Position numbers and translations under genes: made by a program
Part shown: positions 541 to 64,000 of the stretch, piece after piece
How positions within the stretch are numbered: the first letter of the stretch is position 1
Layout of the letters: each line of letters starts with the position of its first letter
Notes under the pieces: generated by a model
Told to the model about the DNA's origin: nothing
Database searches by the model: none
What the model saw: only the letters and a program-made list of their open reading frames with translations
NCBI GenBank assembly: GCA_964247055.1
Contig: OZ176059.1
Span: 3,472,001-3,536,000, forward strand
Reading direction: 5' to 3'
Length of the DNA stretch: 64,000 bases
Origin: Paragordius varius
Lineage: Eukaryota; Animalia; Nematomorpha

Positions 541-900
541 CCGTAGAACCTATTAATTATATGAAAAGCTTAGACCCACTTTATTGTTGACCACTTCACA
601 TTATTTTAGGCCGATTGGCAATACAACGTATAAGTAAAAAATAACAAAGGGTTTGAAATAAACATTTCCTATAGTTACACATTTAATTTGTTTATTAGTT
701 TATGGACAGAAGTTGTTTTATATCATACGTTACTATATAGCTAATTGGCCATGATTAATTTTGGCTTTAATAATGCAATTATAAAGATAAACTCCAAAAC
801 AGACCAGTCAAAGAATGTGCCAAATATTTAATTAACTTATTAAGTCATTTTATTTTCAGAAAGTTTTCATAAAATTAATAAAATCTCAATATATTTTATT
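541..900 (+). repeat. Long repeat unit, distal block A (adjacent to ZNF 3' end)
   Basis: cccactttattgttgaccacttcacattatttt...tttatggaca...atcatacg.tacta.atagctaattggcca recurs at ~13860, 35160, 46990 and 51530, and inverted at ~34520. Confidence 0.8.
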
Positions 901-934
901 TATAAAAAGATATGATATTATATACAAATAATAT

Positions 935-1291
935 TTATTTTTGTACATTTTTAATATATGGTTGGTAATAGTGCTTTTTTGAGTAAATTTTTTATTACAT
1001 GTCGGACAAGGATATTTAACTTGTTCATGAACAGGCTGAATGTGACAAGAGAGCCTTTTTGAGAAAATTCAGTTATACAAATAGGACATTCATGTTCAAT
1101 TTTTTTGTGTGCAGAGATGATGTGCCTAGCAAAATTGCTTTTATACGAAAATATCTTTGAACAAATCTTGCACGGATATTTAATGGGTTCATGAACAGAT
1201 TTATTATGAAAAATAACCCCGAAGGCGTTTTATATATTTTTTTATATTGCAAACATTCAGACATTTTTTCAAAGTTCGCTAGAGTATTCAT
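935..1291 (-). pseudogene. C2H2 zinc-finger gene remnant (about 4 fingers, frameshifted), copy A
   Basis: Frame-hopping translation gives YPCKICSKIFSYKSNFARHIISAH, ECPICITEFSQKGSL and YPCPTCNKKFTQKSTITNHI; homologous to 7385-8170 and 52251-53069. Confidence 0.85.
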
Positions 1292-1429
1292 TTTTTAGGC
1301 TTTGCATTATTAAACTTATTATGAATATTATTCTCATTTTTGCCATATAAGTACATCTTTTTCGAAATCAATTATTTTTTATATTTTTGATAGTCTTTTC
1401 AGCGAAAGGATAATTTATATTAACTAAAA

Positions 1430-3183
1430 TAGGTTTATATACATAATAATATTAAATATAAAGAAGATGGCTACTTATTATGTTATTAATAATACATACA
1501 ATAAATATTCATTTGTAATAGAAAAAAACTTTTAAAAAGATCATCATAGATTAATAACGAAAACATCTTTTTAGATAAATTTTATAAATAATTATTTAAT
1601 GTGATAAAATCTATTAAAAAATAATAATCGTTGACCTTGTGAACTAATTCTCAACTTCAACTAGAAGAAAGTCAAATTTTTAACCAAATTAAATTCAGCT
1701 ATACATAAATTTATAATTTACCCTACGTAAAATAAATCTGCGCATTTTAGGGTAGAATTTGTAACATATTGTGAGTTTTTAAAAAAAAATATATCTTTTT
1801 TTTACTTTATGTGAATAGTCAATATTTTTTTATTTAAAAAATAAGATAAGGTGCTTAAAGTTAAATTAAAATCTTCCTACATCATTTTGTATAGAACGTG
1901 TATTTATTTCAACATTTCGGCTGTTTAGTTATTTTATAAGTTTTATCAACTTGTTAATCTATGACTTGAATTCTTAGCTCAATATATTTTATAATATAAT
2001 TATTGGCATATGAAACATGAGTTGTTAGAACCTATAAATTAAAAAAATACTCAAACCATTAGTATATCATATATGTATGTAGTATGTTATTAGATATGAT
2101 TAAATTGACGCATTTTATATAGCCAATTTATATTCATTTTTTTGCCCATCAGTTTATGACATTTCTGTTTTATAACCAATTTTAGTTTTATTTTATGAGC
2201 GTGTAATAGTATTTATTTTGGAACACTTCTGGTATATGTTTTATGGAAATATATGTTTTATTCCCATATCTTGGTTACCCTTTTGTTTCATCAAAATTTC
2301 TTACCAAATTAGTGCTTTAGTTTACGGTATTCAGCTTAGTCATGATGGTTATTAATATGAATATAAATTTTAGAGAGGGTGATAAGTTAAAAATTTATTA
2401 CTGTTTTAAGAGGCCAAATTTTAACCTTGACTTTTATATAAGTTATATAACTGGAAATTTAGGGGATTAAGATATAACTTAATAACATTTGATTACTGTT
2501 ATTTTAAACTAGTAGTCATTTAACTTATAGTACAATGAAAAAAATTTGGATTTATAAAATTTATTCGTAACATGTTTTGTCAAACAATCTATCTTTACGC
2601 ATATATAAAATTATTTTAATAATTCTTACGTAAATGGGAAAATAATAATTTTTATATGTATGTTAATTTTTTTGGATGATATATTACAGAATATAACTTT
2701 AAGTGAAAATAAAGGCGCTATTTCAAATAATACTGTTGGAACACAATTATAAATAGAGGGGCGGATATAGATGGATAACACTCCTAAATTAATATTTAAA
2801 ATACAGATTTTTTTTAGGATAAAACACAAAAACATAAGGACAAATGTTTTTTAAAAGACAGCTGTACTTTTATAAACTAGATGTATTTTAAAATACCTCT
2901 TTGGTATAAACTATAAAGTAAAAGATGTCTATTAATTACACAATCAATTATGTAATATTATACACTTAACAAACTTATATAGGCAAAAATAAGGTTTAAG
3001 AATGGTTGTCTTTAAAAAATGTTTGTCATTATTTTAATTTTTTCTATTTATATTTTTTGTAAATAGATAGCTTTGTATAAACTTAATTCCTATATACAAT
3101 TATCTATAAGAAACCGCATATAATATAAGCGCATATATATTTTATAGAAAAAAGATAATTTAACTTTTGATGTGGTATATATT
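1430..3183 (+). repeat. Long repeat unit, proximal block X (paralogue of ~59990-61530)
   Basis: Colinear with 60158-61530, from cgttgaccttg...gaactaattctcaacttcaactagaagaaagtc to aaatagaggg.gc.gatata. Confidence 0.9.
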
Positions 3184-4993
3184 GGGCCTGCTGAATAAAA
3201 GCTAGTATATACTGAAAACTAGGTTTTTTCCAGTATATACTAGCTATGTATTGAATAAAAAAATATATTGCTTTTACTATCCAGTACGTACTATGTTTAC
3301 CAGCATTTACTGACAAATATCATTGAATAAAAATTGTATTTTTACAAATTTTACCTAGTAGTTACTGGTTTTTTTTAAGCTGGTAAATGGCAACATTTTA
3401 AACTATTATTTTTTTATTTAAAATAATATCGGTTATATTTTTATAAAATTTCTAAGATAAATGTTTTTTTAAATTACATGATTCATATTTAAATATTATT
3501 TGTTTTATTATTAATAATAATTTTTTTCCTTTTCTATTTTAAGCTTTGTGAGTTCAATTTGCAGAGATTATTACTTTTGTTAAAAAATATTGTTTTTTTT
3601 TCAAGAATGTCCACAATTATATAATTTTCTTCTATCATTTCATTTTTGTGTAAAATATTTGAGTTTATATACTTTATAATGACCTTAATTTTATTTTATG
3701 AACATTTAAATTATAAATATTTGAGTGAATATTTTTGAATGAACCTATTTTTTATATAAAAAACCACCGATTTATTCAAAATCGAGTTATGACTAAGATA
3801 AAATGACCTTTTCATATTTTGATTAAAAATTAAATATATCTTTAAGGAAACTAACTCCCAGGATGCAAATGGAGGTATTTAAAATATCATAAATCTAAAT
3901 TTTGTGTTAAGCTTTCTTCGAGATCCGGGATATCAAGCGAGTGCAGGACATGATTTTAATGTTCATAGTTCCACAATATGCAATACTATACCTAAAGTTA
4001 TGGACGAAATAGTATCAAATTCTCATCAATGGATAAAATTTCCCAAGTCATTTGAAGAGCTTAATATGGCGAATAAATTATGGCTATCCAAATATAAAAT
4101 GCCAACTGCTATTGGTTGCATTGATTGTTCACACTTTGAAATATAAAGACCTAAAGAAAATGTTGATGCCTATATAAATCAAAAGATGTACAATTTACAT
4201 GTAATGCCAATGAAGAAATTACATCCGTGGATGCACAATGGCCACGATTCAAGGATATGGCGAAACACGATTGTTCAGTCATATATGTGGAAACAAAATG
4301 TTCTGTTTGTTAGGTGTAATGATTATCCACTATTCTATCATCCTGGCTCCTAACCCCCTTCAAAAATATGATGATCGATAACGAGAAAAATTCAATAAAT
4401 TACATTGTTCTGAAAACCTTATCGAGCGTGTTTTCGGTCAGATGAACACCTGATTTCCTATACTTGGTAACGAAATTCGTATTAGAACGAATACCAAAAC
4501 TTATATTAACATGTTCCATATTACATAATGTATCCAAATATATTAACGAACCTCTAACAGATTTTGATAATAATTCATATTTTGATATTGAATATGTGGA
4601 GGGTTGAGAAGCAAACATTGGAACCCAGATACTCATGTCTGGCAAAATGAAACGATAGATTCAATTGATCAAATATTATTTTGATTTATTTTTTGTATAT
4701 TTATGAATAAATATGTATTAATAATTGCATTATTTAAAAAAATGGGTAGATAATCGATATTTAATTTTCCAAAAGTTACTTTCTATTTTCATATGAATTT
4801 TTCAAACGCATTTTATGAATGAAATCGAAAACTAATAAAAAAACAAAATGAAAATAAACATTTTACACATACTAAAGACTTAAGTACGTACATGATAGTA
4901 AGTACCTATTTTTATTCAATGTTTTTTCAAAAACTGGTACATACTAACAAGCACCTACAACCCAGTAGGTGCTTGTTTTTATACAGCAAGCCC
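3184..4993 (+). mobile_element. PIF/Harbinger DNA transposon (defective, 1810 bp)
   Basis: TIRs GGGCCTGCTGAATAAAA (3184) and reverse-complement GGGCTTGCTGTATAAAA (ends 4993); ATT on both flanks (3-bp TSD); internal HARBI1-like transposase. Confidence 0.9.
3845..4640 (+). pseudogene. Harbinger (HARBI1-like DDE) transposase, frameshifted
   Basis: QMEVF..LSFLRDPGYQ, AIGCIDCSHFEI, ITSVDAQWP-HDSRIWRNT and downstream LIERVFGQ match PIF/Harbinger transposase motifs. Confidence 0.85.
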
Positions 4994-5191
4994 ATTGTTT
5001 CATATTATTGGGTATTACGTTTGCTATATCTACATTCTTAAAGGACATTTTTCTTATATTTTTTCGCTAAAAACTATAAATATACTTAAAGAATTAAGTT
5101 AATGTTTGATTGCTATAATATAGAATCGTATCTAAGGTGTTAAATTAATATTAGTATTACACTTCCGAAATCGGTAAGTATAAAAAATAAC

Positions 5192-5226
<35 letters not shown>

Positions 5227-6126
5227 TGATAGGAAAATGTATCAAAATTAGGTGCTTTAGGTTTACCTTACAAGTGGTATAAGAAAGTTATTTATACTTT
5301 TGTGGTGCGTGCTCAATATCAGTAAATGGCAAAGCACATTTTGTAATAATTTTTTTTGGTGAAAACTATAAACTTCATTTCTAAAAATATCACTAAAATA
5401 TATCATAAACTAAAAAAATTTTAAAATTAGGCACAGATAGTCCCAAATTTTTACGCTTTCTAAAATGGGCTATCCCCCTAATATAAAGAAAAAATGCCGA
5501 GATTGCGCGATAATAATTTAAATATATGTTAAATTTTTAATAATAAAAATTATTATAAATGCAAAATTTTTCAAAAATCTAATATTTAGCACATCAAATT
5601 ATTTTTGAGGTATAATGGAAACAGTATAAAAGTATTTATATTATAAAAACACTATTTTCTACATAATTCGATGATGTTAAACATTTCTATCATGGCAGAA
5701 CTTTGATTAAAAGATCTGTTTATATTCAAGTTAAATATAAATTTTTAAAATCCCAGGAATTCGAAGCAAACAAATTTTTTATATTAAGATTCTCTACCTT
5801 TCGATATAGTATCACTAATTATAGAGATAATCTGTTATTAATATATCATAAAGCGTTTTTAAACCTCCATAAAATTATTTTAAGAAACGTGTAACAATTT
5901 TCGGACAAATTATATCAAATAAGAAACAAACCTATAATCCAAAAGCATGTATTTTATTGAAAATAGCAGAGCTGTATACCCTTACATTAATTAAATAGAT
6001 GGCCTATTTTTACATAATATGCATTGCAATTATTGATTTGTGTTAAAATAAATATTTATTCTTAGCAAGATATAAATATTCATATTATTTAAGTTTTATG
6101 AAATATAAGCATAACATATTTATCAT

Positions 6127-6130
<4 letters not shown>
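4994..6130 (+). repeat. Long repeat unit, blocks Y-Z (continuation of 1430-3183)
   Basis: Colinear with 61590-62480 and 48490-49300 (aaatggcaaa, agtcccaaatttt, ggaaacagtataaaag, aacaattttcggacaaattatatc, taaatagatggc). Confidence 0.9.
5195..5224. repeat. (TA)n microsatellite; others at ~6128-6163, 28776-28817, 31450-31482 and 44611-44635
   Basis: Direct inspection. Confidence 0.95.
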
Positions 6131-6164
<34 letters not shown>

Positions 6165-7139
6165 ATCTTTATAAATACCGTAAATAAATTTAGCAATGGC
6201 GAAGGCCTGTTTTGAATTTTTATCAATATGATGAAAACAGTTTTACACGCGATTTATATGTGAGTCTTATTAAAAAGTTTTGTTTATATTATTTGTAGAA
6301 ATCCGTGCATCTTTATGAATCCGTAAATAAATTTAGCAATGATGAAAAGCTTAAGGTCTGGAAGGCTTTAGCCAAGAAATGATCAATATTTAAATATTTA
6401 TAAAATATACTCATTTATTGTGTAAAAATAAATTATTACAAAATTATGTCAAATTAATTCGTTTCTCCGATCTACTCCTGTTTGATGGCTATTCGATATA
6501 AGAGCTGTCTGATCTTTCCTCATTATCTATGCTTTTATTGAAATATATATTACTGAATCCAAACCAAATTTAAAAATAATCGATAGTATTCCTGATGATA
6601 TTAGCATTTAAATGGTTTCAAGTGAGTATAAAAATTATTTATGACATATTCAAAATTCTTGAAAAAACGTTTCAGTAGTTAGTACAATGATTTTCTAAAT
6701 TTTCAGTTGAACTTACTAAACTTGAACTGACTACTATTTATTGCCTAAATATATAAAAATAAAGCACTAAAACATTATAAGCTTTAGTAAGCATTTGCCC
6801 GAAAAATATTTTTTGATACATGTCACAAAATTTCCATTAACTACAATATACATATATTAAATTTACTTTATTTAGGCTAATACAGTTTTCACATTCCAAA
6901 AATTTATCCTAGTTCTCGAGATATCGGCTTTTGTAATAACCTTAATCCTGAAAAAACCAGGATTAACAACTGGCTAATTCACATGGCCCTAAAGCCTCTT
7001 AATAATTTAATACCATAATAAATATTTTTAGCACTACGTCTATTTTCAATATATGCCTTTTAGGATGAAAAATTTTGAAGTATCTAAAATTGTGAAATAA
7101 ACCCACATTTTTGCCGCCATTTTTTCTTTAATTTTTTAA

Positions 7140-7384: not shown

Positions 7385-8170
7385 TTTATTATGTACATTT
7401 TTAATATGCTTGGCAAGATTGCTTTTTTCGGTATATTCCTTCAAATCGGACATTCATGTTTAATTTTTTCGTGAACAGCATGCATGTGTGTTGCAAGAGA
7501 GCCTTTATGAGAAAAATCAGTTTTACATATCGGACATTGGTGTTTAATTTTCTCATGAACCGATTTAATGTGCTAAGCAAGATTTTCTTTTTGAGAAAAC
7601 CCATATTGGAACATGCGAATTTGACTTGTTCATGAACAGAACGAATATGTTTGGTCAAGCCGCTTTTATCCTTATAAATTTTATCACATTGAATACATCT
7701 ATTATCATTCTCCAATTTTTAAAAGTTTAAAGATTTAATAGGTTTTGTTTTGTTATCATCAAATAGATTGTTAATATCATTTAGGCTTATATCATTGGAA
7801 TCAATACTGTCGCACACCGGAGTAATTTTATTAATAGTTTTTGGTGATTTTTTCAGAGAAAGATCTAAAGGTTTAGTCTGTTCTCCTACCAAATCAATTA
7901 TTAGGGTATCTTTAGTATTTTCATCATTAGAATTATTATTTTGTAAGGTATTTTCGCTTTTATGTTCCCTTAAATAACAAAGGTTATGGAAAGAAGCGTT
8001 CAAAATTCTTCTTAAATCATCGTTTGTAAAATCTTCATTTTCCAATAAATCAAGAAATGAAGCCGGTTTAGCTGGATCATCAATATAGGTTTCTTGTTGA
8101 TTTTTTAGTTCTACTTTATAAAGTTTAGTATCGAGATCACACCAAAGTTTGTAAGTCGAATCGCCAAAAT
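7385..8170 (-). pseudogene. C2H2 zinc-finger gene with N-terminal domain and PLDLS motif, copy B (nonsense and frameshift lesions)
   Basis: After a ttttag acceptor: DFGDSTYKLWCDLDTKLYKVELKNQQETYIDDP...EDFTNDDLRRILNASF...TKPLDLSLKK...; then CIQCDKIYKDKSGLTKHIRSVH and three further, partly broken fingers. TAA at 7719-7721 where copy D has CAA. Confidence 0.9.
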
Positions 8171-8306
8171 CTAAAAATTTGTTTGATTTGATTATAATAT
8201 TTTATAAATGGTGAGACGAAATGACATACGTTAAAAAAGGTTTAAAATCAAGTTAACAGACATTAGTTAAATATCACTGAAACAGTAAAAATTGGAATTG
8301 CTTAAA

Positions 8307-8523
8307 CAGACAAAAAGATAAATATTTTTTATAAAAAGACAACTATAATTTTTTTAATATTAATTTTTTCAAAATAAATTATTTACTTACGTTGTGATAT
8401 ATATAAATGAATGCATTACCAATCGATATCTCTATATAATACTTTACAGATTAAAACATTCAATTATCATTTAAATAAATTTAAATAGTATAAGAATTTT
8501 TTTTATGTTTTACGTTTTGTCCG
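8307..8523. mobile_element. MITE family 1 (CGGAC...GTCCG TIR)
   Basis: cagacaaaaagataaat...aaaagacaa / tttacgttttgtccg. Confidence 0.65.
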
Positions 8524-9229
8524 TTTAATTTCAATTTTTACTGTAATATTTGAGAAATTTTGCAAATAACTTTAACATAAGCAACTGAAAAATAATAATT
8601 ATTTGTTATTAATATAAGGTTGCCTATCGCATATGGTAAAATATTTAAAATATGAACCCTAAAAATGACAAAACTATAAGATTAATTAAAATTTTAAAAT
8701 ATATAATATTTTTCTTAAAAAACCGGTTTTTTATTAAATTAAAAAAGTAAAATATAACTAGAATTATTATATAATCAGTTTATATAATATTACCAATAAA
8801 AATGTATATAAATTTTAATATAAAGTATTTTAGATTATTAATGATTGGTAATATAATAGATTATGATAATTTTAATTATATAATATTTTTTGATATTATT
8901 TTATGAATTTTAAATTAATTATTAATAACATAAACTATACATAAAATTAAAAATAATTAAAAAAATTACGAATTCCAAATCTAAAAAATAATCTTATAAT
9001 ACCATAGTTTTTTGAATTTAGTAATATACATATTATGTTACTATTTAAGATAATTTATATTAAATAAAATTACAAAAATATAATCCATTAATTGAACAAT
9101 TTAATTCAATTAATTTATAATATTTTTTAAAAATTAGAGATATAAATAAGGAAAATAAAATTAATAATTAATTTATATATAAAAATAATTTAAAATAATA
9201 TAATTAAAATATCATATAATGTATATTTA

Positions 9230-11100
9230 AATTAAAAATAAAAAATAAAAATTATACCCATTTTCCAAATAAATTTGAATATTTTTTCGAATAAATAAAA
9301 ACAGACAATTAATAAAAACCGTTTAAAAAGAAATCGTCTGTCGTTTCATTTAATACTTTTTCTATTATTTTGATGGTTTAAAACTTATAACTTTTGAAAT
9401 TAATATAAATACTTTATATTGCATTTATAAATAGTTAATTAATAACTAATTTTATTTTAAATTTACCAACCATATATATATATATATATATTAACAATTT
9501 TATCAGTTTTTATTGATAAATTATTTATTATTTAATTAAAAAAATATATTTTTTAATTATATTTATTAATTTTTTATTAAATCATTCTTGCATTTCTGAT
9601 ATCACACCTTTTTAAGAAGCAAGTAGTCAATTATATTTATTTACATATAAACCCCAAAAATAGGCGGGTAGAGTTTATTTAGATTTTATTATCCGCTTTA
9701 TATAAAATCAAATGATTCTTACTTTAAACCAGGAGTGGGCCGTGTTTGGGCCTTCAGAGACTTTGTGTGCGACCCGCGAATGGAATTCATAAATTGCAAA
9801 AACATGCTCATAAAATCTAGTAAAATTCATATTCCTAAGACGATTTTTTCTAAACCATTTTAAGAACGAGATGTATTTGTTATATTCATCTTTTAGTCAC
9901 ATATCTTATCAATATTTATTACGTGCCTAAATTAATTCAATATTCTAAAAAACAGCGTTTTGTTAAAATAAAATATAATTCAAGAAGAATAAGTATCTTA
10001 ACTTTTTCAGCAAAATTTAGGTCTCAAACATTATTTTAATTTGAATTATTAAAAAATCGTTTGCAAAAGATATTCCGTAAAATATAATATCATTCTATCA
10101 TATAATGAAAAGTGCTGTTTAATTTAAATTTTGTAAAAAAATTGTTTTATCATTTTAAAAATGGAATATTTTTATATCATAATAATAACTTTTCTTAGTT
10201 TATAGAATCTTCTAAGTAAAGAATATTTCAAATAAAATTATTATTATAAATTTTGTTGCAAAAGTAAAGTCTATATATGGTACAGAAATAGTCGACTTAA
10301 TTATTCAAATTTTGTGCTGTATATAAAAAGGCGAATTTTAGTGTTAGTTTTTAGTTTGTTTTAGATGATTTGGATTAGCGATGATTAAATATTTTATTTA
10401 TTTTAGCCAAAAATTTATAAAATTTATTAATATATAAAAAAATAACTTAGAATTAAATACATATTGGTATTAGTTTAGTAATATATATATGATAAATATG
10501 TTATGCTTATTAACCTCAAAAAATTAAAAATAAGTGAATATTTATACCTTGCAAAAAATAAATATTTATTTAAACACAGTTAGTATACTGTAACCCCTAC
10601 TACGGAGGAATTCTACATAAAAAATATGCCATTTGTTTAATAGGTGTAAGTAATATACGGCTCTGCTATTTACAATTTAAATTACATCCTAAATTTTGGA
10701 TTTTATAGGTATTTGTTATATGAAAACTCGTTTAAATTAATTTCATGGAAAAGGTATAAAAACGCTTTAAGATACATTAATAAAACTTTTTCTATATAAT
10801 TCAATAGTGATTTTTGAAAGATAAAGAATAATTAAAAAATTTGTTTACTATTGGAAATGTTTAAAAATTTATATCAAACTTGAAGAGATACAAATCTTTT
10901 AATCGAAGTTCTGCCGTGATAAAAATGTTTAGCATCATTGACTTATTTGGAAAAAGTGTTTTTATAATGTTAAAACACTTTACTGTTTCCATCAAACCTC
11001 AAAAAAATAGTATAAAGTACGCTTCAACAATTTGAAAATATATTTTTGATATACATTTTCATATAGATAATTTTAGTATTTACGGAATATCAGCATTTTT
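9230..11100 (-). repeat. Long repeat unit, inverted copy (blocks g-f-W-Z)
   Basis: tacccattttccaaat, aaatcgtctgtcgtttcattt, ttctgatatcacacctt, atttataccttgcaaa and aaatgtttagcatcat are reverse complements of blocks in 61900-63800. Confidence 0.85.
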
Positions 11101-13739: not shown

Positions 13740-14300
13740 CTTAGCGGTTTTTTTACTAGGCTAAACGTAATCTTTTGAAAAGTTCCTAAAAATTACGATG
13801 AAAAAGCGTTGGCTGATTAAACCGTAATTTTAAATGAAAAACTTTAGGTATATACAGTACCCTTTTTATTGTTGGCCACTTCATAATTTAAGGCCAAATG
13901 GCAATACAGTAACGTCGGAGTTAAAAACAACAAACGCTGTGCAATAAACATTTTTTCATATAATTACAACATGATTTATGTTTATTAGTTTATGGAAATT
14001 TTATCTTATTACATAAGCTACTGTATAACTAATTGTTCAACGATATAGTATGTATTGTACAGTTAAAATTAAAATTTAACGAACAAAACGCAAAATTTTT
14101 TTTAAAAGACAAAGCTTACATTTTAAAATTTTATTTATCCTATAAATATCATTATTTTTATTTACAAAAAACTCCAGTGCAAGCAGTCAAATAGCATGTA
14201 AAATATTTTATTAACGAAAATGCCTAACGTATCTAAGTAATAAATTATATCTCAATTTTTTTTTGCGAAAAATATAAATTGAATACAAAATTATATTTAA
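13740..14300 (+). repeat. Long repeat unit, block A plus a MITE-1 left end
   Basis: aaaaagcgt.ggctgattaaaccgta, tatacagtaccc...ttgttggccact, cgaacaaaacg (14080), aaaactccag; same order as 51460-52120. Confidence 0.8.
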
Positions 14301-14399
14301 GTGAAATGCTATGTGTAGATCATCTTAAATTTGATAAATGAATTTTTAATATATATTTTTATGACTGGTAAGAGTGCGTTTATGAGTCTAATTAGCAAT

Positions 14400-14640
14400 A
14401 CACCTTGTATGGATGTTTAAATTGTGAACAGATTCAATGTGTTAACCAAGTTGGACTTTTTTGGCATATCTCTTTTTACAAATAGGATATTCACGTTAAT
14501 TTATTCATTAACTGATTTCATGTGCCTTCCAAGATTTTCTTTTTGGGTATATTCATTTTAAGGACATTCTTGCTTATTTGTTCATGTATTGAAATAACAG
14601 GTTATTTTTATACCCCCCAATATTATACATTGTGAAATAT
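14400..14640 (-). pseudogene. C2H2 zinc-finger remnant, copy C
   Basis: ENLGRHMKSV..., EYPICKKRYAKKSNLV..HIESVH in shifting frames; same position relative to block A as the other copies. Confidence 0.7.
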
Positions 14641-45385: not shown

Positions 45386-45399
45386 TAAAAAACGATTAG

Positions 45400-47987: not shown

Positions 47988-48469
47988 TATAGTTTACAAA
48001 ACCCGAATAAAAGTATTTCGTATTTTGAACAAAAAATATTTATCCCTAATTTTAACTTTTTTTCTTTATATTTACTGTAAATAGATGGCTTATTTAGTTA
48101 CCGATTAATTTAGATTAAAAATTATTGAATTAGTAACTTTATATTGTATTTATTGTTAATTTCAAATATTTCTCAAATAAAAATGGATATCATTTAACTT
48201 TTTATATGGTATAAATTATTTTATATTATTGGGTTCTTACGTTTGCTTTTTGTACACCCGTTTTTTCCTGAATTCAAATTTTTGCCTAAAATAGTGCTAA
48301 AAAAATTTAATATAATTTTTAATCAATTCATTCTCATATTTTCGCGTTATAAATTATTGCGATATGTCTAGTTTTTTTGGTAATCTTTCTATTAGATATT
48401 TTAGTTAATTCAGATTGCAACGTCCACAAATCCACAACCTGATGTATAGATTATTATGGTGCTTTTGTG

Positions 48470-51400
48470 TTTCCCTCACGAGTGATTTAACATATTTACA
48501 CTTTTGTAGTAAGTGAATATGAAATGGCAAAGTTTGCACACACTTTTACTTTTTTTTGCTAAAACTTGAATATAAAGAGCAAAAAATATTTTCAGAAAAA
48601 TTTTAATTTTTAGATGTGGGTTACGAAAGTCCCAAATTTTTTCGCTTAATATTGAGTACTTAAAATAAACGCAAAAATGCTAGGATTGCGGAATTTAAAA
48701 TATATGTTAAATTATAATGCTAAAAATATTTAAATAATATGCAAAAGTTTTCAAAAATCTAATTAACAAAATGTACATTATACTATTTTTGATGTATGGA
48801 AACAGTATAAAAGTTCTTTAAGATATTATAAAAACACTTTTTCCACATAATTTGATGATGCTAAACATTTCTATCACCTCAAAACTTCGATTAATCTGTT
48901 TCTTTAAGTTAAATATATTTTTTTAATAATCCAAAAAATTTGACAGCAACCAAAATTTTCTAATTAAAATTCTGAACCATTTGATATGTTTATCACCATA
49001 GAATTTTATAGTAAAAAGGTTTATTAATATATCTTAAAGTGTTTTTACCCTTTCGATAAAATTATTTTAAAAAGGGCAACAATTTTTGGACTCATAACAA
49101 AACCTATAAAATCCAAATTTAGCAATTTTATTTTGAAAATAGCAGAGCCATGAAATTAATTAAACAGATGGCATATTTTTTACAGTATAATAAAAATGCA
49201 ATCTATATGGGTTAAAATAAAGTAACAGTGTTTAAAAAAATACTTATTCTTTGCAAGGTATAAATATTCACCTTTTTTTACTTTTATCAAGTTATTTAGC
49301 ATAACATTTTTATCAAATATATATTACTAATCTACCAATATGTCAGTTTATGTCACAAGATATATATTTTCGGGTAAATACAATTAATTAATGTATTATG
49401 ATTATTTAAACTATTTCAATTTTACAAAAACGACTTAAGAAGCCTAATATAACCGGAACTCGCTTCTCTATATACAGCAATCATCATTTTATTTGGAATT
49501 TTTTTGTACTTAAAAAATAAAATAAAACATTTTTACAGTGAAAAATTATTAGTTGATAGAGAAAATGCATTTTTTTAATAAACAACATTCTTTTTATAAT
49601 ATTTAGTGTCGAAATTCCTAACACAGCGCTTTTCAATAAATATTTGCATAATGACTTTTTATAATTTACGTTATTATTCGCGTATAAAAAATTAATAAAC
49701 TTAAATTTTACTTGAGAAACAAATTTGTATAAAAATAAATTGACTAATTTCTTAAAATATACATTTATTTTAAAAAAAGGCAGTTTTATTCGCAAATCTA
49801 TAATTTTTTACAAAATATTATGATTATGCTCCTACTCATTTTTCTGGCTCTTTTATGTCATTAAAAATAATTGACAGCTTTTTTTAAAAAGGTATAATAC
49901 AATTTGTAAAAGATTTAAAACAAATATATTATATAATAAAAATAATATTTTTTAAGAAACATTTGTTAATAAATAATTAACTATTATAAAATCTAAATGA
50001 AAAGTGTAGCTTAATTTTTGCAAGTTTTTATAAAGATTCTAAAAATAATTGAAAAATATAAAGTTAATGTATGGTATTTATTGGTAAAAAAGTATATATT
50101 ATTTCATAAAAATTTATTTTTACCATAAATAATTGAAAAAAAAATTGAAATATATAATGAAACGACAGACGATTTCATTTCTTAATGGTTTTGAATTGTG
50201 TGCTTTCTATTTATTCGAAAAATTATTCAAATTCAATTAAAATATGGGTATTTATACGACTAATTTAAAAATATTATAAATTAAATTATTTTCAAATTAT
50301 TTGTAAATAATTTATTAACTTTTAATTTTAATAATAAAGGCTACTGGAATATATAAGCCATCTTTTTTATGTTTACTATTGTTATGTACAACCTCTTTAA
50401 GTTAATTTAAATAAAATCACTAGGATTGTATAAAAAGATATGTTAGAATGTTAACCCATTAATAACAAATTAGGTGACTGAAAAAATAGTTATTTTGATA
50501 TGCTAAAAACTTAAAACAAAATCTTGATTTTTGGCAAATAATTGTTTCAAATGGCAAAATGTGAAATAGTGATATATAACAATCACTATATTCTACTAGT
50601 GTTACTAATGAGCGTATAGAGGAAAAATTAGTATTCGAAGAAGTCTGGTTGTCTTTTAATTTGTCTTATTATGTTTTATTTGATATTAATTTTTATTTAT
50701 AAAATATGAATTCAACAAATATTTGATCAATTATATAACTAATATTTTCAACACTAATATGCGCGGCATATAATTATATTGAAATAAACAAAAGATAAAT
50801 AAAAAATTTATAATTCCGGATTTATAGAGATACTATAATGAATGACCTGCTATATATTAACAATGAGTATCTGACATAAAATTATTAAATAAATAATAAG
50901 CAATTATAATTTTTTTCAATATATTTTCTTTCATTTAATCTATACCATTATTTATCTATTTAAATTTTTATGATATATTTTGAGTCAATGATTAGCAAAA
51001 ATTAAAAATTATTTATTTAAAGATTTTACTAACGAAGATTAAAGCAAGCTTACTTATTATATTGTGGCTATATATAACTTATTTAAATAGTTCGAGAGCC
51101 ATACCAGTTCGATAATTAAGAATGTAAAAAATTAACAATTAAATATTATTATTAAATTTGATTAAATATTTTATTTCAATATATTTGCCATGCATTTATA
51201 AATTAGCATAAATCCATACTTTAAAATATAAACATTTATCAACCAATAAAAGCCGACTTAATATTAATATAAATTTAATCAAATATTTTCTGATCTTTGT
51301 CTAATTATGTAAGATATTCTTGCAGGTTATATTATATCTGGATATATGTCATTTTCTAATTTTTTATTTCTTTTTTTATGAAAATGTAATATTTTTGGTA

Positions 51401-52150
51401 AATTTGTAGTTTTTTTTAACAGTTCGAAGCGCAAGTAAAGGTTTAAGCTGATAATTACAATAAAAAGCGTGGCACGCCGATTAAACCGTAAAGCCTTTGT
51501 TATATTGAAAAAGAGTATATAAATAAATTCGCTTTATTGTTGCCCACCTCACATTATTTTTGGCCAATCGGTTGTACAGTAATGTGTGAAAAAACAACAA
51601 ACGATGTGAAATAAATATTTTTACCTATAAAATTCCAACATGATATTAATTTATTAAATTATGGAATTTTGTTTTATAAATAATTTAAATAAATAACTTT
51701 ATTTACGAAATTAGTATATTTATTTGAAATTTATTTTTTTATAAGTTATGGACTTTTTTTATATTATACGCTACTGTATAGCTAATGGGTCAACATCAAA
51801 GTGAGTACTGTACAGTAATTGAAAATATACGGACAAAACGTAATAATAAAAAAAACTAAAACAATCATACATTAAATTTTTTATTATAATTATTTTCAAA
51901 TTGGATAAAACATAATTGATTGTGTTACGAATTTAACTTTATAATCTGCTGTGTAAAACAATCAGTCAATTAAGAAAATCAAGATATTATAGTTATGGTT
52001 ATTTGTAAGAAATAATTGTCTTTATATTTTTACATTTTGTCGGTATAATTTCGATTTTTACTGTAATTCATTTTTTATCTACAAAAGAAAACTCCAAAAC
52101 AAAGCGATCAAATAGCATTTATTTTATTAACGATGCATTTTGCAATAAAC
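48470..52150 (+). repeat. Long repeat unit, most complete forward copy (blocks Y through A)
   Basis: Contains all marker blocks in order, ending at MITE-1 and the ZNF 3' end. Confidence 0.9.
51830..52043. mobile_element. MITE family 1, left of ZNF copy D
   Basis: ta-cggacaaaacgt ... acattttgtcgg-ta. Confidence 0.75.
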
Positions 52151-52250
52151 GTCTCATAAATTATATATCTCAATATGTTTGCGAAGTGGATATTTAAACA
52201 AAATTATATTTAATGCTACATAAAATATTATATGATGTTGAATAAAGTGT

Positions 52251-53069
52251 TCAATTATGTACATTTTTAATATGCTTGGCAAGATTGCTTTTTTCGGTAT
52301 ATTCCTTTTTACAAATCGGACATTCATGTTTAATTTTTTCGTGAACAGCATGCATGTGTGTTGCAAGAGAGCCTTTATGAGAAAAAATTTAGTTTTACAT
52401 ATCGGACATTGGTGTTTAATTTTCTCATGAACCGACTTAATGTGCTCAGTAAGAGAGCTTTTTTGAGAAAACATTTTCGAACAAATTTTGCACGGATATT
52501 TCACTTGTTCATGAATGGAACGAATATGTCTGGCTAAAATATGTTTATTTTTATAAATTTTATCACATTACATCGATACTCATTCTCTAATTTTTGAGTG
52601 TTTAAGGACTCACTAGGTTTTCCATTATTAATGTTATCATTAAATAAATTGTTAATATGATTCATGCTTATATAATTGGAATCTATATTTCGGCATACAG
52701 AAGTAATTTGTTTTATACTTTTTGGTGGTTTTTTCAGCGAAAGATCTAAAGGTTCCGTCTGTTCTCCTACCAAATCAATAATTAGGGTATCTTTGTTGGT
52801 TTTGGTATCATTTTTATTTTCATAGTCTAAATTATTATTTTGTTGAGTATTTTCGCTTTTATGTTCCCTTAAATAACAAAGGTTATGGAAAGAAGCGTTG
52901 AGAATTCTTCGTAAATCATCGTTTGTAAAATCTTCATTTTCCAATAAATTAATAAATGATGTCGGTTTAGATGGATCATCAATATATGTTTCTTGTTGAT
53001 TTTTAAGTTCTACTTTATAAAGTTTAGTATCGAGATCACACCAAAGTTTGTAGGTCGAATCGCCAAAAT
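52251..53069 (-). pseudogene. C2H2 zinc-finger gene with PLDLS motif, copy D (two frameshifts)
   Basis: DFGDSTYKLWCDLD...TEPLDLSLKK...; fingers CDKIYKNKHILARHIRSIH, CKICSKMFSQKSSLTEHIKSVH, CPICK..FSHKGSLATHMHAVH and CPICKKEYTEKSNLAKHIKNVH; TGA at 52251. Confidence 0.9.
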
Positions 53070-53278
53070 CTAAAATATATGTTTCATTTAATTATAAAAA
53101 ATAATTTATAAATGATGAAAAATCTACACTGTTCAAGAAAATGGTTTGAAAGTTAATAGACATAATTATAAATGATTATATAAATAATGATTAACTTTGC
53201 TAATATGAACTGTAATTAAACTTATTAAAAAACTAAATTAAATTATTTTTTCTTAATACGGTAAAAATTAATATTATA

Positions 53279-53496
53279 CCGACAAAACGTAATAAAGAAA
53301 AATATTTTTCCAAAAGACAACCATAATTTTTTAAAATCTTAATTTTTCCTCCATATATAAACGATGGTAAAATATCACATTGATTGTTTTAGTATATATC
53401 TACTTCACATCTTGGAATATTAAAAAAATAAGATTTAAAAAATATGGATGTTTTTTTAAAAAAAGTAATTTGTCTTTATATTTTTACGTTTGTCCG
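53279..53496. mobile_element. MITE family 1, right of ZNF copy D
   Basis: ta-ccgacaaaacgt ... tacgtttgtccg-ta. Confidence 0.8.
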
Positions 53497-54109
53497 TATA
53501 ATTTTAATTTTTTATGTATAAGGTTGAATAAAGTCGCTTATAAAGCTGGATTGTAAAAAATACAACTATTATGTGGAAGATTAATTTAAATATTAAAAAT
53601 TGTAACAAACAGCTTTAAAAAGCGGTGTTGTTTTAATTAAATTAGAAAAATGCTATATATAAAAAATAAACAATTTTCTTATATTTATCAATATTATTAG
53701 ATCTAAATATAATTTTACCAGTTATTTATTTGATAAAAACGTTAATAAATTTTAAAATTAAATAAATTTGATATATATTACTGTTTATTAATTATTAATA
53801 TAAATATTACAATTTACAAATATATATTTTTTCAAATTTAAATATTTTACTTTAAGAATTTAAAATTAAATATTATATATAATATAAAAAATTACAATTT
53901 CTGAAAAATCTTGAAATTTTTTTAATTTCTAATAAAATAAAATATGATTATACTTTAGAACAAGATAAGTTGAATTATTTTACACAAAAAATATAATATT
54001 AATAAAAAAATATATTTGAAATATTGTATAATTAATTTGATATATAAAATAATTTAAAGAAAATTATAGAATTATTTTATAATAATTATAAAAATATTAA
54101 ATTTACTAA

Positions 54110-55620
54110 TTTAATTATATACCCATTCTCCAAATAATTTTGAATATTATTGCGAATAAATGAAAAACAGACAATTAAAAAACCGTTAAAAAATGCAATC
54201 GTCTGTCGTTTTATTTTATATACTTAAATTTTTTTCAATTATTATTAGTTTAAAACATTTTAAAATGAAATATTATATTTTAACTGATAAATACCATATA
54301 TTTTCTTGATATTTTTTATTTACTTTGAAAAACTTTATAATCTAATAAATTTAAACACTATATAATTAATAATTTAAAATTGATAAATAATTTAATTATT
54401 TATTAAAAATAATAAATTTTATTAAAAAAATATTTTAAATTATAAATAATAATATTGTTTTAATTCATTTTAAAAATTATGATATCATACCTTATTAAAC
54501 AAGCAGTCAGTTTTTAGACATAAATTAGAAAATGGGCAAAGTTTATTTAAAGTTAATTTTTTTTGATAAAAAATCAAATTATTACTTTAAACCAGGATAA
54601 AAACATCTGAATAAAATCTTGGTAAAATTGATATTCCCAAAAAGATTTTTTCTAAATAAGTCCATCTTTCCAAATAATAAGAATGATAAATAATTGTTGC
54701 CTTCCGTTTTTTAAAGTTTTATGTATGAAATCTAATAAATTTTTATGAATGCTCGCATATATATATATATCTCAAATTTGGCTCGTCGGAATTAATTGCG
54801 GCCCGCAAAACCTACTTTAAACTCTTAGTTCCTGTAAATATAAAACTTGAATAAAACAGCCTTTTTAAAATAAAATATATTTCACAAAGTTAATTAATAA
54901 ATTTTTTAAATTTTTCAGAAATATTCAAATCTAAAAAACTATATTTTAGTTATAAATAAATATTGAAAAATTATTGTGAGAAATTTCGTAACAAATAATT
55001 ATGATCCTGTATTATATAGAAAAGTGGTGTTAAATTTAATAAAAAATTGTATATCGTTTTTTACAGTTTATATTGTACTATATCTTTTGATATAATAAAT
55101 ATACCAAATCAAGCAAACGACACTAGATGGAATAAATATAAAAGTAATGATAGTCTTTAAATTAACCTAAATTAAAATTTTGATTGGTTTTATTAAAAAC
55201 AGAGGCGAGCTTTAGTTGTGTAGTTTCTTAGTTCGTTTTTGAAAATTTGAATAAGTTTAAAGATTATTAAATATTTAAAGAATATTTATATTTAGCCAAA
55301 AATTTATATTTTAAGATGATTTAAATAGACATATCGCTAATAGTTTTGATGTATATATTAGATAAAAGTTTAATGGTTATTAACTTCTTAAAAGTTAGAA
55401 AAGGTACATATTTATACCTTGCAAAGAATAAATATTTATGAAAATACAGTAAGTTTATTTTTATTTCAAATACTTCTACAATATGTCACTTCTGAAATAA
55501 TATATGCTATCTGTTCTTGAATTTATAAGGTAATATAACGCCTATACTATGTTATTAATATACCATGCATTATTTTGGATATCATAAGATTTTGTTTATT
55601 ACTTAAATATTTTTCCGAAA
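54110..55620 (-). repeat. Long repeat unit, inverted copy (blocks g-f-W-Z)
   Basis: tacccattctccaaat, aatcgtctgtcgtttt, gatatcatacctt, ggctcgtcggaat and atttataccttgcaaagaataaatattt; colinear with 9230-10620. Confidence 0.85.
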
Positions 55621-59069: not shown

Positions 59070-60100
59070 ATGCTTTAACAAACTATTTTTAAATTTTTGG
59101 CTAACCATTGACCCTTAAGAACACTTTTAAATAGAAGGTAAATAATGTTATATTAATATTGACGAAAGAAAATTAAAAAAAATATTATAATTGTTTAATT
59201 TTTAAAAAATTTTTATTATAAGATTAATACCATGTCAACAATAATAATTATCCTGCAAGTCATTCCTTATAGTATATCTATAAACGGACTTAGGTTAACA
59301 TTTGATTTGATTCTTGGTTTATTTAATTTTAAATCAAATTATAGGCCGCGAACATTAGTGTTTATTTATATTTATGATTCTATATAACCAAATATTTATT
59401 GAATAAAGATTCGTATATTTTATTTTATAAGTCTTACATTAAAAATACATTTTAAACGATTTAAGAATTTGTAAAAGACAACCAGACTTTCCAAATATTT
59501 ATTTCATATAAGCTCTTTAATTACAATTATTGTATATAAAATTAATTTAGTAATATATTTCTCTATTACACATTCATTTTATACAATATTTAAATGAATA
59601 AAGATTTGTAGATTATGGTTGTTTTTAAATTTGTGTCTATTTTATATTTTACTGCATATAATTCATGAAACTCCCTTTTGACGCTATTGGTACCCACATA
59701 TTGTCAAAACACAACAAAGAAAAAAATATCTTTTTTTGCGTTTTAAATTGGTTTTAATATGGGGTAATGTTTTTTTAAAGATGTTGAAATATCTTAAATA
59801 TTTGAATAAAATATAATCAATTAATATTAGAAAATTAAAATAGTTATCAATTTATATAGTTAGCTTATGTTTTATTGAGTTTCCAATAAATAATAACAAT
59901 TTATTTTTCAATCATTTACTTTGTTAATGATCAGATTTTTTTACATTCCAAAATACTTTTGTTTGAATAAATTAAAATAGGCTATCATACATAACAATAC
60001 TAAACATAAAGAAGATGGCGTAATCCGATCATTCATCATCTTTTAAATTTTGATAAAAAATACTAAGATATCATAAAGCCATAAAAACAAATAATAAAAT
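59070..60100 (-). repeat. Long repeat unit, inverted copy (blocks m-k-j-h)
   Basis: tttttggctaaccattgac, gcaagtcatt..ttatagtatatct, aagacaaccagactt and cataaagaagatggc. Confidence 0.8.
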
Positions 60101-60157
60101 TTTAGGCAAAACTTTATATATATTTATTTGATGTAATAAATTTTAAAAAGTAATAAC

Positions 60158-63100
60158 CGTTGACCTTGCACTGAACTAATTCTCAACTTCAACTAGAAGA
60201 AAGTCAAATTTTTAACCAAATTTAATATAGCTATACATTATTTTATAATTTACTCTACGTAAAATACATCTGCGCATTATAGGGTGAAATTTGTAACATA
60301 ATGTTAGTTTTTAGAAAAAAATGTAGCTTTTTTTACTTTGTGTGAATAGTCAATATTTTTTTAAAGTTTAAAAAAATAAGATAAGTTGCTTAAAGTTAAA
60401 TTTAAAATCTTCCTACATCATTTTGTATAGAGCTGTGAATTTGATATTTAAAACATTTCGGCTCTTTAGTTATTATATAAATGTAATAAATTAATCCATG
60501 ACTAAAATTTTTAGCTCAATATATTTATAAATATAATTATTGGCATATGAAACATGAGTTGTTATATAAATTAAAAATACTCAAACCATTAGTTTAAGTA
60601 TTCTTTCTTATATATATGTAGTATGTAATTAGATATTATTATATTGATGCATTTTATATAACCAATTTATATTTATTTTTGTTCATTAGTTTATGACATT
60701 TCTGTTTTATAACTTTTAATTTAATTTTTCTAGCGTGTTAGGGTATTTAATTTGCAATACTTCTGATAAATGTTTTATGGAAATTATGTTGTATTGGCCA
60801 TATCTTGGTTACCCTTTTGTTACATTAGAATTCCTTACCAAAATAGTGCTTTAGTTTACGGCATTTTTGTTTAGTATAGTCTCTAATAATATGAATATAA
60901 ATTATAAAGAGGGGGAAAAGTTAAAAATTTATTACTGTTTTTATAAAAAAGGTCAAATTTAAACCTTGATTTTTGTAAGTTATTAATGGAAATTTAAAGT
61001 ATAATATAACTGGTAACATTCAATTTTTTTCGCATATTAAATCGTTTAAATTATAGTACCATGGAAAAATATGGATTTATAAAAATGTAATTTTTTTATT
61101 ATGGATTGAAATGAGATAATTTAACATTTTTACCGAAAACTCGTAATCAATTTAAATAATCTACATTGATGGGAAAGAAAAAAATTTATTATGTATTAAA
61201 TAATTTCGGATGATAATAATTTGACAGAATATAACTTTAAGCGAAAACATAAGGACTATTTTTATTAAATATTGCTGGAGAAAAAAAAGACAATACCAAA
61301 ATAGAGGGGCAGATATAACTACAGTCCTAATTAGATAAATAAATATTTAATTTTCAGTCAAATTCGGAATTATACAGATAAAACTAAAAAAACATAAGAA
61401 CAAATATACTCCGAGCACTATTTACATAAAGAGATGTATATGTGTTACACAATCAACTATGTATTATACAATTGCACAATTAAATAATTTATATAGGGAA
61501 AAATATGGTTTAAAAAAATTATGGTTATATTTTATAAAAAATATTTGTTATTATATCATGATTATTTATGGTTTAAGCCCCTACGAGTCATATAATAAAG
61601 TTATTTACACTTTTGAGTGATCCATATCAGAAAATGGCAAAATATGAGCACATTTTGTAATATTTTTTTGGTGAAAGTTAAATGTTTCATATCAAAAAAT
61701 CACTCAAATATATCATAAACTACATATAAAAAAAATAATATTTATTTAAAAAAAAAACTTATTTTTAGATGTGGGATTCGTAGTCCCAATTTTTTCACAG
61801 TTATATGAGCTAGTACTTAAAACAAACGCATAAATGCCGGAGTACGCGATAAAATTTTTCAATATATGTTAAATTTTGATACTAAAAATATTTATATAAT
61901 AATCCAATTTTTTTCCAAATTCTTATATTATTAGCAAAATTTTGTTGAAGCGTACTTCATACTATTTTTGAGGTATGATGGAAACCGTATAAAAGTGTTT
62001 TAAGATATTATAAAAAATTTTCTACATAATCTAATGATGCTAAACATTTCAATCACCTCAAAACGTCGATTAAAAGATCTCTTTGTCTTCAAGTTAAATA
62101 TAAATTTTAATAGAATCCCAATAATTTTAAAGCAAACAAACTTAATTAAAATAACTTTTTGAAATCTTTATCACTATTGAATTATATAAAATTTATTAAT
62201 ATATCTAAAAGCGTTTTTATACCCTTTCCATAAAATGAATATAAAAAACGATTAACAATTTTCGGACAAATTATATCAGATAACAAACAAACCTATAAAA
62301 TCCAAAATAATTTAGCATGTATTTTAAATTGAAAATAACAGAGTCGTCGTAAATAAACCTTTACATTAATTAAAGAGATGGCATATTTATGATAGGTAAA
62401 AAATATAACCTTGTCCAAATAAATATTTATTCTTTGCAAGGTATTAATATTCACCTTTTTTCCTTTTATAAAGTTAAAAAACATAATATATTTAATATAC
62501 TTACAAACTGTTGCGATACCTATTTAGGACCTGCTAAATATAAATTTTTGGCTAAGTATAAATATTTATATATATAACCATCTCTAAACTAATTCAATTT
62601 TACAAAAACTTACTAAGATACTAACACAACTGAAACTCGCTTCATAATACCGCACAAAATTTGAATAAATATGTCGTCTTATAGACTTCAACGAATTTTT
62701 AGTAATAATTTTTGGAATTTTTGTACCTAAAATTAATAAAAAATATGTTTTAAATCATTAGATTGATATAATAGATGCATTTTTAGAACCTTTATATAAT
62801 GTAAAAATCCTAACACATTACTTTTTAAATATATCAAAGCGTTATAATTATTTATTAGGATATATATTTTGCACAATGATTTTTTAACATTTTATAAAAC
62901 CAAAATACTGTATTTCACTGAATTTTGCTGAAATAGTCTAAAAAATTCATTAATTAATCAAAAAATATATTATTATCAATAAAGGCGGTTTTATTGAAGA
63001 ATTTAACATTTTTATTAGTAATTTAATAGTATAAAGAAGGGATATAAAGCACAAATGGCTTTGCGGCCGCATTTTTAGCTAACATATTTCGACGAGCCGC

Positions 63101-64000
63101 ATTTGGGATATATATATGCGGGCATTTATAAAAATCTATTAGATTTCAAACATAAAACTTCAAAAAGAAACCGTAATTTAACATTCTCCTTCTTGCAATT
63201 TCGATACACCTATTTAAAAAAGTTTAGGGTCAATTTTACAAAGTTGTGTAAAAATGTTTTTGCAAATTATGAATACCAACTTTTTCTGTGATCGTAGTAA
63301 AAGTCTCATATAGCCGAATGCGACCTTTGGTTTAAGAACATTTGATTTTTATATTTAAGATAAATTCTAAATAAACTTTTCCAAACAATTTTCTGGCTTT
63401 TTTTGTCATTAAAAATAATTAACTGCTTATCGAAAGGTGTGATATCAGAATTGCAAGAATGATTTAAAATAAATAAATATAATTAAATATATTTTCTGAA
63501 AAATAATTATCTTTAATAAAAATTTAAATAATTATATCAATAAAAATTGATAAAATTGGTAATAAATATAGGTTGGTAATTTTAAAATAAAAAATAGTTA
63601 TTGAAAATTACCTATTTTTAAATGTAATATAAACTATAATTATATTTTAAAAAATTATAATTGTTAAACCATCAAAATAATAGAAAAAGTATAAAAAGAA
63701 ACGACAGATGATTTCTTTTCAAACATTTTTTATTAATTGTCTGATTTTTATTTATTCGAAAAAATATTCAAATTTATTTGGAAATCGGTATATATTTATA
63801 ATTAGTTTATTGATATAATATTATATTTCAATTATATTATTTTAATTATTTCATGTATATATTTTTTTATTTAAATATTATGATTTTATTTAAATATTTT
63901 GATTATTTTATTTTAAATTATTTGTATATAAAACAAATAATTATTTTAATATTATTATTTAAAACTTAAATTTTGAAAAATAAATATACAATATTAGAAA
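60158..64000 (+). repeat. Long repeat unit, forward reference copy (blocks X-Y-Z-W-e-f-g), running off the window
   Basis: Colinear with 1627-6130 (minus the Harbinger element), 48470-50260 and 29200-30010. Confidence 0.9.

What the first reader, a model, noticed from the sequence alone, without database searches (positions are those of the whole stretch)
541..64000. An unnamed ~8-kb multi-block repeat unit, present in more than 12 rearranged copies, makes up most of the window
Seen: about 15 short conserved blocks recur in fixed order on both strands, separated by variable AT-rich spacers. Examples are agtcccaaatttt, ggaaacagtataaaag, taaatagatggc, cgacgagccgcatttg, ggtgtgatatcagaa, aaacgacagacgatttc and cagtacccactttattgttggcc. 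Some junctions look like small introns (GCAAG|GTATAA...AAG, 34 nt, 49258-49291; TTTTAG| at 48613 and 61768), and some blocks vary at third codon positions (KHFYHLKT: ttt/ttc, cat/cac, act/acg). Inference: this is either a dead multi-exon gene family or a giant non-autonomous element built from a captured gene. The same in-frame stops occur in several copies, which suggests amplification after coding function was lost. I recognise no transposase and no terminus for it.
Basis: partly seen in the sequence, partly recalled or inferred. Interest (0 to 1): 0.75.

Follow-up and report, generated by a model that had tools for sequence, protein, structure and literature searches.

The report
Duplication unit of zinc-finger gene cluster
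The recurring 6-8 kb multi-block repeat is the copy unit of a locally amplified zinc-finger gene family: one two-exon gene with its promoter, intron and old transposon-littered flanks. It is not a dead multi-exon gene or a giant transposon, and this scan has already described the gene family on other DNA.

Summary
The repeat is real. The seven named motifs recur in one fixed order on both strands, and the same block order recurs on a second contig.

The size claim is overstated. My block library covers 43% of the window, and 56% is repeated in any form. There are about 12 partial copies, and only three or four hold four or more blocks.

The unit is a-or-f / b / c / d / e. Block d is the large coding exon of a C2H2 zinc-finger gene with an orphan N-terminal domain and a PLDLS motif. 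Block c holds a conserved promoter and 5'UTR block ending ATG G|GT, which I read as a one-codon first exon, plus a roughly 1 kb intron.

Two of them sit inside fragments of small dispersed repeats: a foldback MITE arm and a ~235-bp repeat. I found no codon periodicity, no shared open frame and no splice support outside d.

The unit-specific blocks are confined to C10:3.46-3.61 Mb and C11:0.1-0.64 Mb. Copies abut head to tail, and several on both contigs share one inversion scar. This points to segmental duplication, not transposition. All copies in the window are broken, but intact ones exist elsewhere.

The scan has already found this PLDLS zinc-finger cluster on other DNA. New here are the unit anatomy and the gene model.

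The parts
59177..64000 (+). Reference unit, type A: a 59177-61545, b0 61553-61762, b-core 61763-62500, b-tail 62501-63010, c1 63015-63900, c2 (intron) from 63901. It runs on into L001 with d, e and f up to window-equivalent 67600.
   Evidence: The exon-1 start codon is lost here (ATCGG at about 63785).
51438..55439 (-). Near-complete unit on the minus strand: b-core/b-tail 55439-54846, c1 54792-54041 (exon-1 ATG at 54126), c2, d 53271-52269 (exon 2 starts at 53070; open for the first 178 codons, to 52537, then frameshifted), e 51963-51438.
47990..51230 (+). Truncated unit facing the previous one: m2 47990-48335, b-core 48608-49312, b-tail, c1 49837-50330 (ATG at 50244), then g 50331-51230. Block g is c1-downstream sequence joined to the reverse complement of the 5' part of a, i.e. 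an inversion scar.
7403..11079 (-). Minus-strand unit: b-core/b-tail 11079-10001, c1 9827-9153 (conserved promoter/5'UTR block 9352-9240, ATG at 9261), c2 8959-8312, d 8280-7403 (exon 2 starts at 8171, stop after 150 codons).
1419..7000 (+). Partial unit: a 1419-3032, b0 plus b-core 5256-6122, then (TA)n and module h 6123-7000. Positions 1523-6961 are 92.4% identical to C11:172990-178465.
575..1199 (-). Fragments of e (575-746) and of the finger array of d (956-1199).
13838..14542 (-). Fragments of e (13838-14153) and d (14413-14542).
18382..21611 (.). Inverted pair of truncated units: g and c1 on the minus strand (18382-19235), then b-core, b-tail, c1 and g on the plus strand (19549-21611, ATG at 20974).
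28486..31284 (.). b0, c1 and c2 on the plus strand (28486-30734, ATG at 29996), followed by an inverted c1 (30996-31284, ATG at 31112).
43945..47193 (-). b-core fragments (43945-44464, 45675-46031), a short c1 piece (45565-45659, plus strand), and e at 46803-47189. Block e contains a 204-bp element with 27-nt inverted ends at 46990-47016 and 47167-47193.
48570..48895 (+). 5' part of b-core. It matches one ~320-bp arm of a foldback MITE family that is dispersed over contigs C1-C8.
   Evidence: inverted arm pairs about 90 bp apart at eight or more loci; vestigial inner inverted repeat 48808-48872 / 48983-49047.
63050..63286 (+). Part of c1 that holds the motif cgacgagccgcatttg. It is a copy of a ~235-bp repeat dispersed across the genome.
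   Evidence: hits on C1, C2, C3, C4 and C10:746083 to query positions 36-272 only.

Best explanation
The window lies inside a cluster of roughly 150 kb on C10, with a sister cluster of roughly 540 kb on C11. The cluster was built by repeated segmental duplication, both tandem and inverted, of a 6-8 kb genomic segment.

The segment is one transcription unit plus its flanks.
- Blocks a or f, and b, are upstream DNA that already carried old transposon fragments.
- The end of c1 is a TATA-like element, a ~100-nt conserved promoter/5'UTR block, and a first exon ending ATG G|GT.
- Block c2 is an intron of about 0.95-1.3 kb.
- Block d is exon 2, of about 270-330 codons. It encodes an orphan 70-aa N-terminal domain, a PLDLS motif and 4-6 C2H2 fingers.
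- Block e is the 3' flank.

After an early burst of copying, the copies evolved by birth and death. The coding N-terminus stayed under purifying selection while the flanks drifted to 65-80% identity. The flanks therefore look like short conserved blocks in AT-rich spacers. Most copies, including all those in this window, then broke independently.

Shown here: block order, confinement to two regions, the open reading frame, the conserved ATG G|GT, and the shared inversion scar. Inferred: the promoter and splice assignment, unequal crossing-over as the copying mechanism, and a repressor function through CtBP docking.
For: Order and copy structure:
- Adjacency counts over 264 kb: d>e 15, c1>c2 13, c2>d 11, b-core>b-tail 11, b-tail>c1 9, b0>b-core 9.
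- Head-to-tail runs: a-b-c-d-e-f-b-c-d at 59177-72011, and e followed by a at 119477-122152.
- A c1 | inverted-a junction (block g) is spanned by contiguous alignments in the window and in L017, L018 and L019.

Confinement:
- All best genome hits of a, d, e and the promoter part of c1 lie in C10:3.46-3.61 Mb or C11:0.1-0.64 Mb.
- The protein search adds only C29 and two diverged copies, C2:15158121 and C11:1833387.
- The same method does show dispersed copies for the MITE arm in b.

Gene:
- Fingers are confirmed by Pfam (E = 3.6e-21).
- One search reports open frames up to 331 aa. Read here from the exon-2 start, three copies are open for 271-315 codons.
- ATGG|GTAT is conserved in 11 of 15 copies, 943-1278 nt upstream of a TTTTAG|AT acceptor in the matching phase, and in 6 of 7 promoter blocks in the window.
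- The period-3 signal occurs only in d.

Recent exchange:
- A 5.5-kb segment at 92.4% identity and a 1.9-kb segment at 97% identity are shared between C10 and C11.
Against: - The tree of 16 N-terminal copies is star-like. A burst from one source fits a transposon as well as a rapid array expansion.
- Copies lie in both orientations at irregular spacing.
- The genome search scores only the best 40 candidates, so weak copies elsewhere cannot be excluded.
- No transcript data support the start site or the splice.
Confidence: 0.75

Rival explanations
1. The unit is a large non-autonomous transposon that captured a zinc-finger gene. One possible form is a long-inverted-arm cassette, b-c1 ... c1-b. 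It would have spread by transposition with a strong local preference, or survived only in this repeat-rich region.
For: - Star-like tree.
- Copies on both strands.
- A recurrent quasi-palindromic module with inverted arms of about 2 kb (48570-50330 vs 55439-54041).
- A foldback MITE arm sits in every b block.
Against: - There are no common outer termini. Block b is preceded by a, f/m2 or other DNA, and followed by b-tail or by (TA)n plus h.
- No transposase lies within the unit.
- Unit-specific blocks are confined to two regions making up 0.6% of the genome, whereas MITEs of similar divergence are dispersed.
- Head-to-tail junctions are shared between copies.
Confidence: 0.12
2. One reading: the blocks in a, b and c are exons of a dead multi-exon gene, or of a second gene in the unit, that was amplified after it lost function.
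For: - Blocks richer in G+C stand out in AT-rich spacers.
- Strings resembling splice acceptors and donors (TTTTAG, G|GTATAA) flank b-core.
Against: - Period-3 SNR is 2.5 or less in a, b and c.
- The longest stop-free run in 18 copies of b is 96 codons, in differing frames and strands.
- Block a has no ORF above 53 aa.
- The motif region shows indels not divisible by three and changes at all codon positions.
- Two of the blocks lie in fragments of dispersed repeats.
Confidence: 0.05
3. The locus is a satellite-like higher-order repeat, a structural or centromere-adjacent array, in which the zinc-finger gene is only a passenger.
For: - The cluster on C10 ends at a 236-bp satellite (L008:6449 onward).
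- Neighbouring direct copies are spaced 5-8.5 kb apart.
Against: - There is no regular period, orientations are mixed, and identity between copies is only 65-85%.
- The coding N-terminus is much better conserved than the flanks, which points to selection on the gene.
Confidence: 0.05

Closest known systems
KRAB-ZNF clusters of mammals (e.g. human chromosome 19), built by tandem segmental duplication
   Same: There are dozens of clustered paralogues. Each has a conserved N-terminal module and a C-terminal C2H2 array in one large exon. Copies show birth-and-death decay, inverted and direct orientations, and transposons between genes.
   Different: The N-terminal domain is not KRAB: Pfam finds no match outside the fingers. 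The putative co-repressor link is a PLDLS peptide. The first exon codes only the start codon.
ZAD-ZnF clusters of insects and FiNZ-ZnF clusters of cyprinid fish
   Same: They are lineage-specific, locally amplified zinc-finger families with their own N-terminal domain.
   Different: There is no ZAD or FiNZ signature. The N-domain has no detectable relative and its fold could not be modelled.
Foldback (FB-like) elements and MITEs
   Same: The 5' half of b-core matches one arm of a dispersed foldback MITE. Block e holds a 204-bp element with 27-nt inverted ends.
   Different: These are passengers that were duplicated along with the unit. The unit itself has no defined ends and is not dispersed.

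Membership tests
Clustered, tandemly amplified C2H2 zinc-finger gene family (the kind that includes KRAB/ZAD/FiNZ clusters) | C-terminal array of classical C2H2 fingers | tested here: met
   PF00096 with 4 stretches, E = 3.6e-21 (L005 copy) and 1.5e-15 (L018 copy).
Clustered, tandemly amplified C2H2 zinc-finger gene family (the kind that includes KRAB/ZAD/FiNZ clusters) | Many paralogues physically clustered, with shared flanking DNA | tested here: met
   66 protein matches, nearly all in two regions. Flank order is conserved.
Clustered, tandemly amplified C2H2 zinc-finger gene family (the kind that includes KRAB/ZAD/FiNZ clusters) | Conserved family-specific N-terminal domain | tested here: met
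   69 columns among the first 80 residues are invariant in 8 copies. DNA conservation is 0.96 there, against 0.6-0.8 in the flanks.
KRAB, ZAD, SCAN, BTB or FiNZ zinc-finger families in the strict sense | N-terminal domain matches that family's profile | tested here: not met
   No Pfam hit outside the fingers at E up to 1. The word search finds finger-only matches. The best Atlas score is 0.75.
DNA transposon or Helitron, autonomous or not | Defined termini (inverted ends or TC...CTRR) shared by all copies | tested here: not met
   Copy ends differ and several alternative neighbours are found. Helitron ends were not searched separately, because no unit end could be defined.
DNA transposon or Helitron, autonomous or not | Dispersed genomic distribution | tested here: not met
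   Blocks a, d, e and the promoter part of c1 are found only in C10:3.46-3.61 Mb and C11:0.1-0.64 Mb among scored hits.
DNA transposon or Helitron, autonomous or not | Transposase or Rep-helicase in at least some copies | tested here: not met
   The only ORF in the unit is the zinc-finger gene. No family-by-family genome scan was run.
Multi-exon (pseudo)gene made of blocks a-c | Codon periodicity and shared reading frames in the blocks | tested here: not met
CtBP-recruiting repressors | PxDLS motif that binds CtBP | not testable with these tools
   The PLDLS string is present in the translated copies. Binding was not tested.

The most novel reading that the evidence does not exclude
The recurrent quasi-palindromic module may be functional rather than a scar. 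In it, a solo promoter plus first exon (b-c1-g) points at the 3' end of a complete gene (e-d-c-b). Convergent transcription from the solo promoters would make antisense or double-stranded RNA across the gene. That RNA would give the family self-regulation by small RNAs. The foldback-MITE arm in every unit could also drive the inversions.
Probability: 0.06. Interest if true: 0.6.

Novelty: new member of a known kind. Interest (0 to 1): 0.3.

Why it matters
The work turns a puzzling 'unnamed giant repeat' into an ordinary process: birth-and-death growth of a lineage-specific zinc-finger repressor-like family. It also gives the family a testable gene model, with a conserved promoter block, a one-codon first exon, a ~1 kb intron and a single coding exon. 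The model will help annotate the intact copies elsewhere in the genome. Finally, the case shows how old segmental duplicates in a very AT-rich genome can mimic exon-intron structure.

Tried and rejected
- Gap-length-multiple-of-3 test on pairwise alignments: no power. Block d scored 0.19, like the non-coding blocks.
- Hairpin in the conserved 5' block: not more stable than shuffles (z = -1.64) and nearly invariant, so covariation cannot be tested.
- AlphaFold2 on an 8-copy alignment: the N-domain has pLDDT below 50, so I ran no fold search.
- ESM Atlas: no lead.
- Rfam and tRNA scans of the window: nothing found.
- Genome search with the 236-bp satellite: not scored.
- Nematode SL1 pattern: absent. 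The organism stays unverified.
- The first MAFFT run timed out.
Full report
**Context.** The window is G000:C10:3472001-3536000, in a 110.6-Mb genome of 44 contigs. GC content is about 23%. There are no tRNA or Rfam hits and only six ORFs of 120 aa or more. This is eukaryotic, repeat-rich DNA, and it is not human. An earlier scan note calls the organism a horsehair worm. I could not verify that. The nematode SL1 leader is absent.

**Checking the observation.**
- They keep one order on both strands: m1>m2>m3, then m4>m5>m6, then m7.
- Self-BLAST puts 56% of the window in repeats at 65-92% identity.
- It also finds long colinear chains, for example 522-10587 against 46927-55457.
- I took the copy at 59177-67600 as reference; it runs past the window end into L001. 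Its blocks are a, b (b0, b-core, b-tail), c (c1, c2), d, e and f.
- The order a/f-b-c-d-e recurs in the adjoining 100 kb of C10 and in ten 10-kb samples of C11.
- Adjacency counts over 264 kb are strongly non-random: d>e 15, c1>c2 13, c2>d 11, b-core>b-tail 11.
- The block library covers 43% of the window in about 12 partial copies.
- So the unit is real and about 6-8 kb long, but it does not make up 'most' of the window.

**What the blocks are.**
- Block d holds the only convincing coding sequence. It encodes a highly conserved N-terminal region of about 70 aa, a PLDLS motif and 4-6 C2H2 fingers.
- The reading frame has no conserved ATG of its own and starts right after a TTTTAG acceptor.
- About 0.95-1.3 kb upstream, 11 of 15 copies keep a ~100-nt island. 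It is the best-conserved non-coding stretch, at 0.86-0.95 against a background of 0.75-0.8.
- That island ends ...TTTGGAAA ATG G|GTATA. The phase fits: G plus AT gives Asp, the first residue of the conserved domain. I therefore read it as promoter, 5'UTR and a one-codon first exon.
All protein searches used exon 2 alone, by reference.
- Six of the seven promoter blocks in the window keep ATGG|GTAT. The reference copy has lost it.

- Period-3 signal is absent from a, b and c, and present in d.
- Across 18 copies, b has no shared open frame. Block a has no ORF above 53 aa.
- The 'KHFYHLKT' stretch shows indels not divisible by three and changes at every codon position.
- The 5' 320 bp of b-core, which holds agtcccaaatttt and the TTTTAG at 48613/61768, matches one arm of a foldback MITE dispersed over C1-C8. 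A vestige of the inner inverted repeat remains.
- The part of c1 that holds cgacgagccgcatttg is a dispersed ~235-bp repeat.
- These transposon fragments predate the amplification and were copied along with the gene.

**How the unit spread.**
- Blocks a, d, e and the promoter part of c1 are found only in C10:3.46-3.61 Mb and C11:0.1-0.64 Mb. The exceptions are contig C29 and two diverged gene copies. The same search method readily shows dispersed copies for the MITE arm.
- Units abut head to tail, e followed by a or by f then b.
- A specific inversion scar is spanned by contiguous alignments in the window and in three C11 loci. In it, c1 is joined to the reverse complement of the 5' part of a; I call this block g.
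- Segments of 5.5 kb at 92.4% identity and 1.9 kb at 97% identity are shared between the two contigs.
- Copy ends are heterogeneous, and no transposase lies in the unit.
- Together this favours segmental duplication, by unequal exchange with inversions, over transposition.
- The star-like tree and the mixed orientations keep a transposon-like burst as a minority rival.

**State of the gene copies.**
- All copies of d in the window are broken.
- One search reports open frames of 270-331 aa around about ten of the matches elsewhere.
- Lesions in the first 520 nt are mostly private to each copy. One frameshift is shared by two copies.
- So the genes were amplified while functional and decayed afterwards, with occasional copying of dead genes.

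**Relation to earlier scan findings.** Earlier notes already describe this family as a PLDLS-C2H2 cluster of about 46-48 copies. They compare it to KRAB, ZAD and FiNZ families. My work agrees and adds three things: the anatomy of the duplication unit, the promoter and first-exon model, and the transposon origin of several 'blocks'.

**Dead ends on the N-terminal domain.** It has no relative in Pfam, in the word search or in the Atlas. It could not be folded with confidence.

**Verdict.** This is an ordinary kind of genome feature, a lineage-specific zinc-finger gene cluster, seen through its duplication unit. It is neither a new mobile element nor a dead multi-exon gene.

Noticed in passing
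L008:6449-10000 (C10:3612449 onward): A 236-bp satellite array, 92-95% identical between copies, starts where the unit copies on C10 stop. It may bound the cluster.
   Followed up: partly
window:47422-47991: A ~570-bp MITE with 25-nt inverted ends (92% match) plus subterminal repeats, inserted between block e and block m2 of one unit.
   Followed up: partly
window:41844-43911: A young inverted repeat: 782-bp arms at 92% identity around a ~500-bp spacer. It is unrelated to the unit.
   Followed up: no
window:57344-58926 (+), 44892-45383 (-), 25829-26977 (-): Retroelement remnants between units. They are a LINE-like reverse-transcriptase tail (weak RVT_1 hit), an ORF that looks by eye like an integrase C-terminus, and ORFs that look by eye like non-LTR ORF1. 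The last two have no Pfam support.
   Followed up: partly
G000:C29:95-472 vs C11:641603-641980: The small contig C29 gives scores identical to a C11 copy of the gene. This is likely assembly redundancy or a haplotig.
   Followed up: no
G000:C2:15158121-15158411 and C11:1833387-1833632: Two diverged copies of the N-terminal domain (67-70% identical) lie outside the clusters, without detectable unit flanks. They are candidate progenitors or older paralogues. They could not be fetched.
   Followed up: no
window:59469-59627 (block a, nt 292-450): A ~150-bp stretch of block a also hits C1 and C9. This is another small dispersed repeat embedded in the unit.
   Followed up: no
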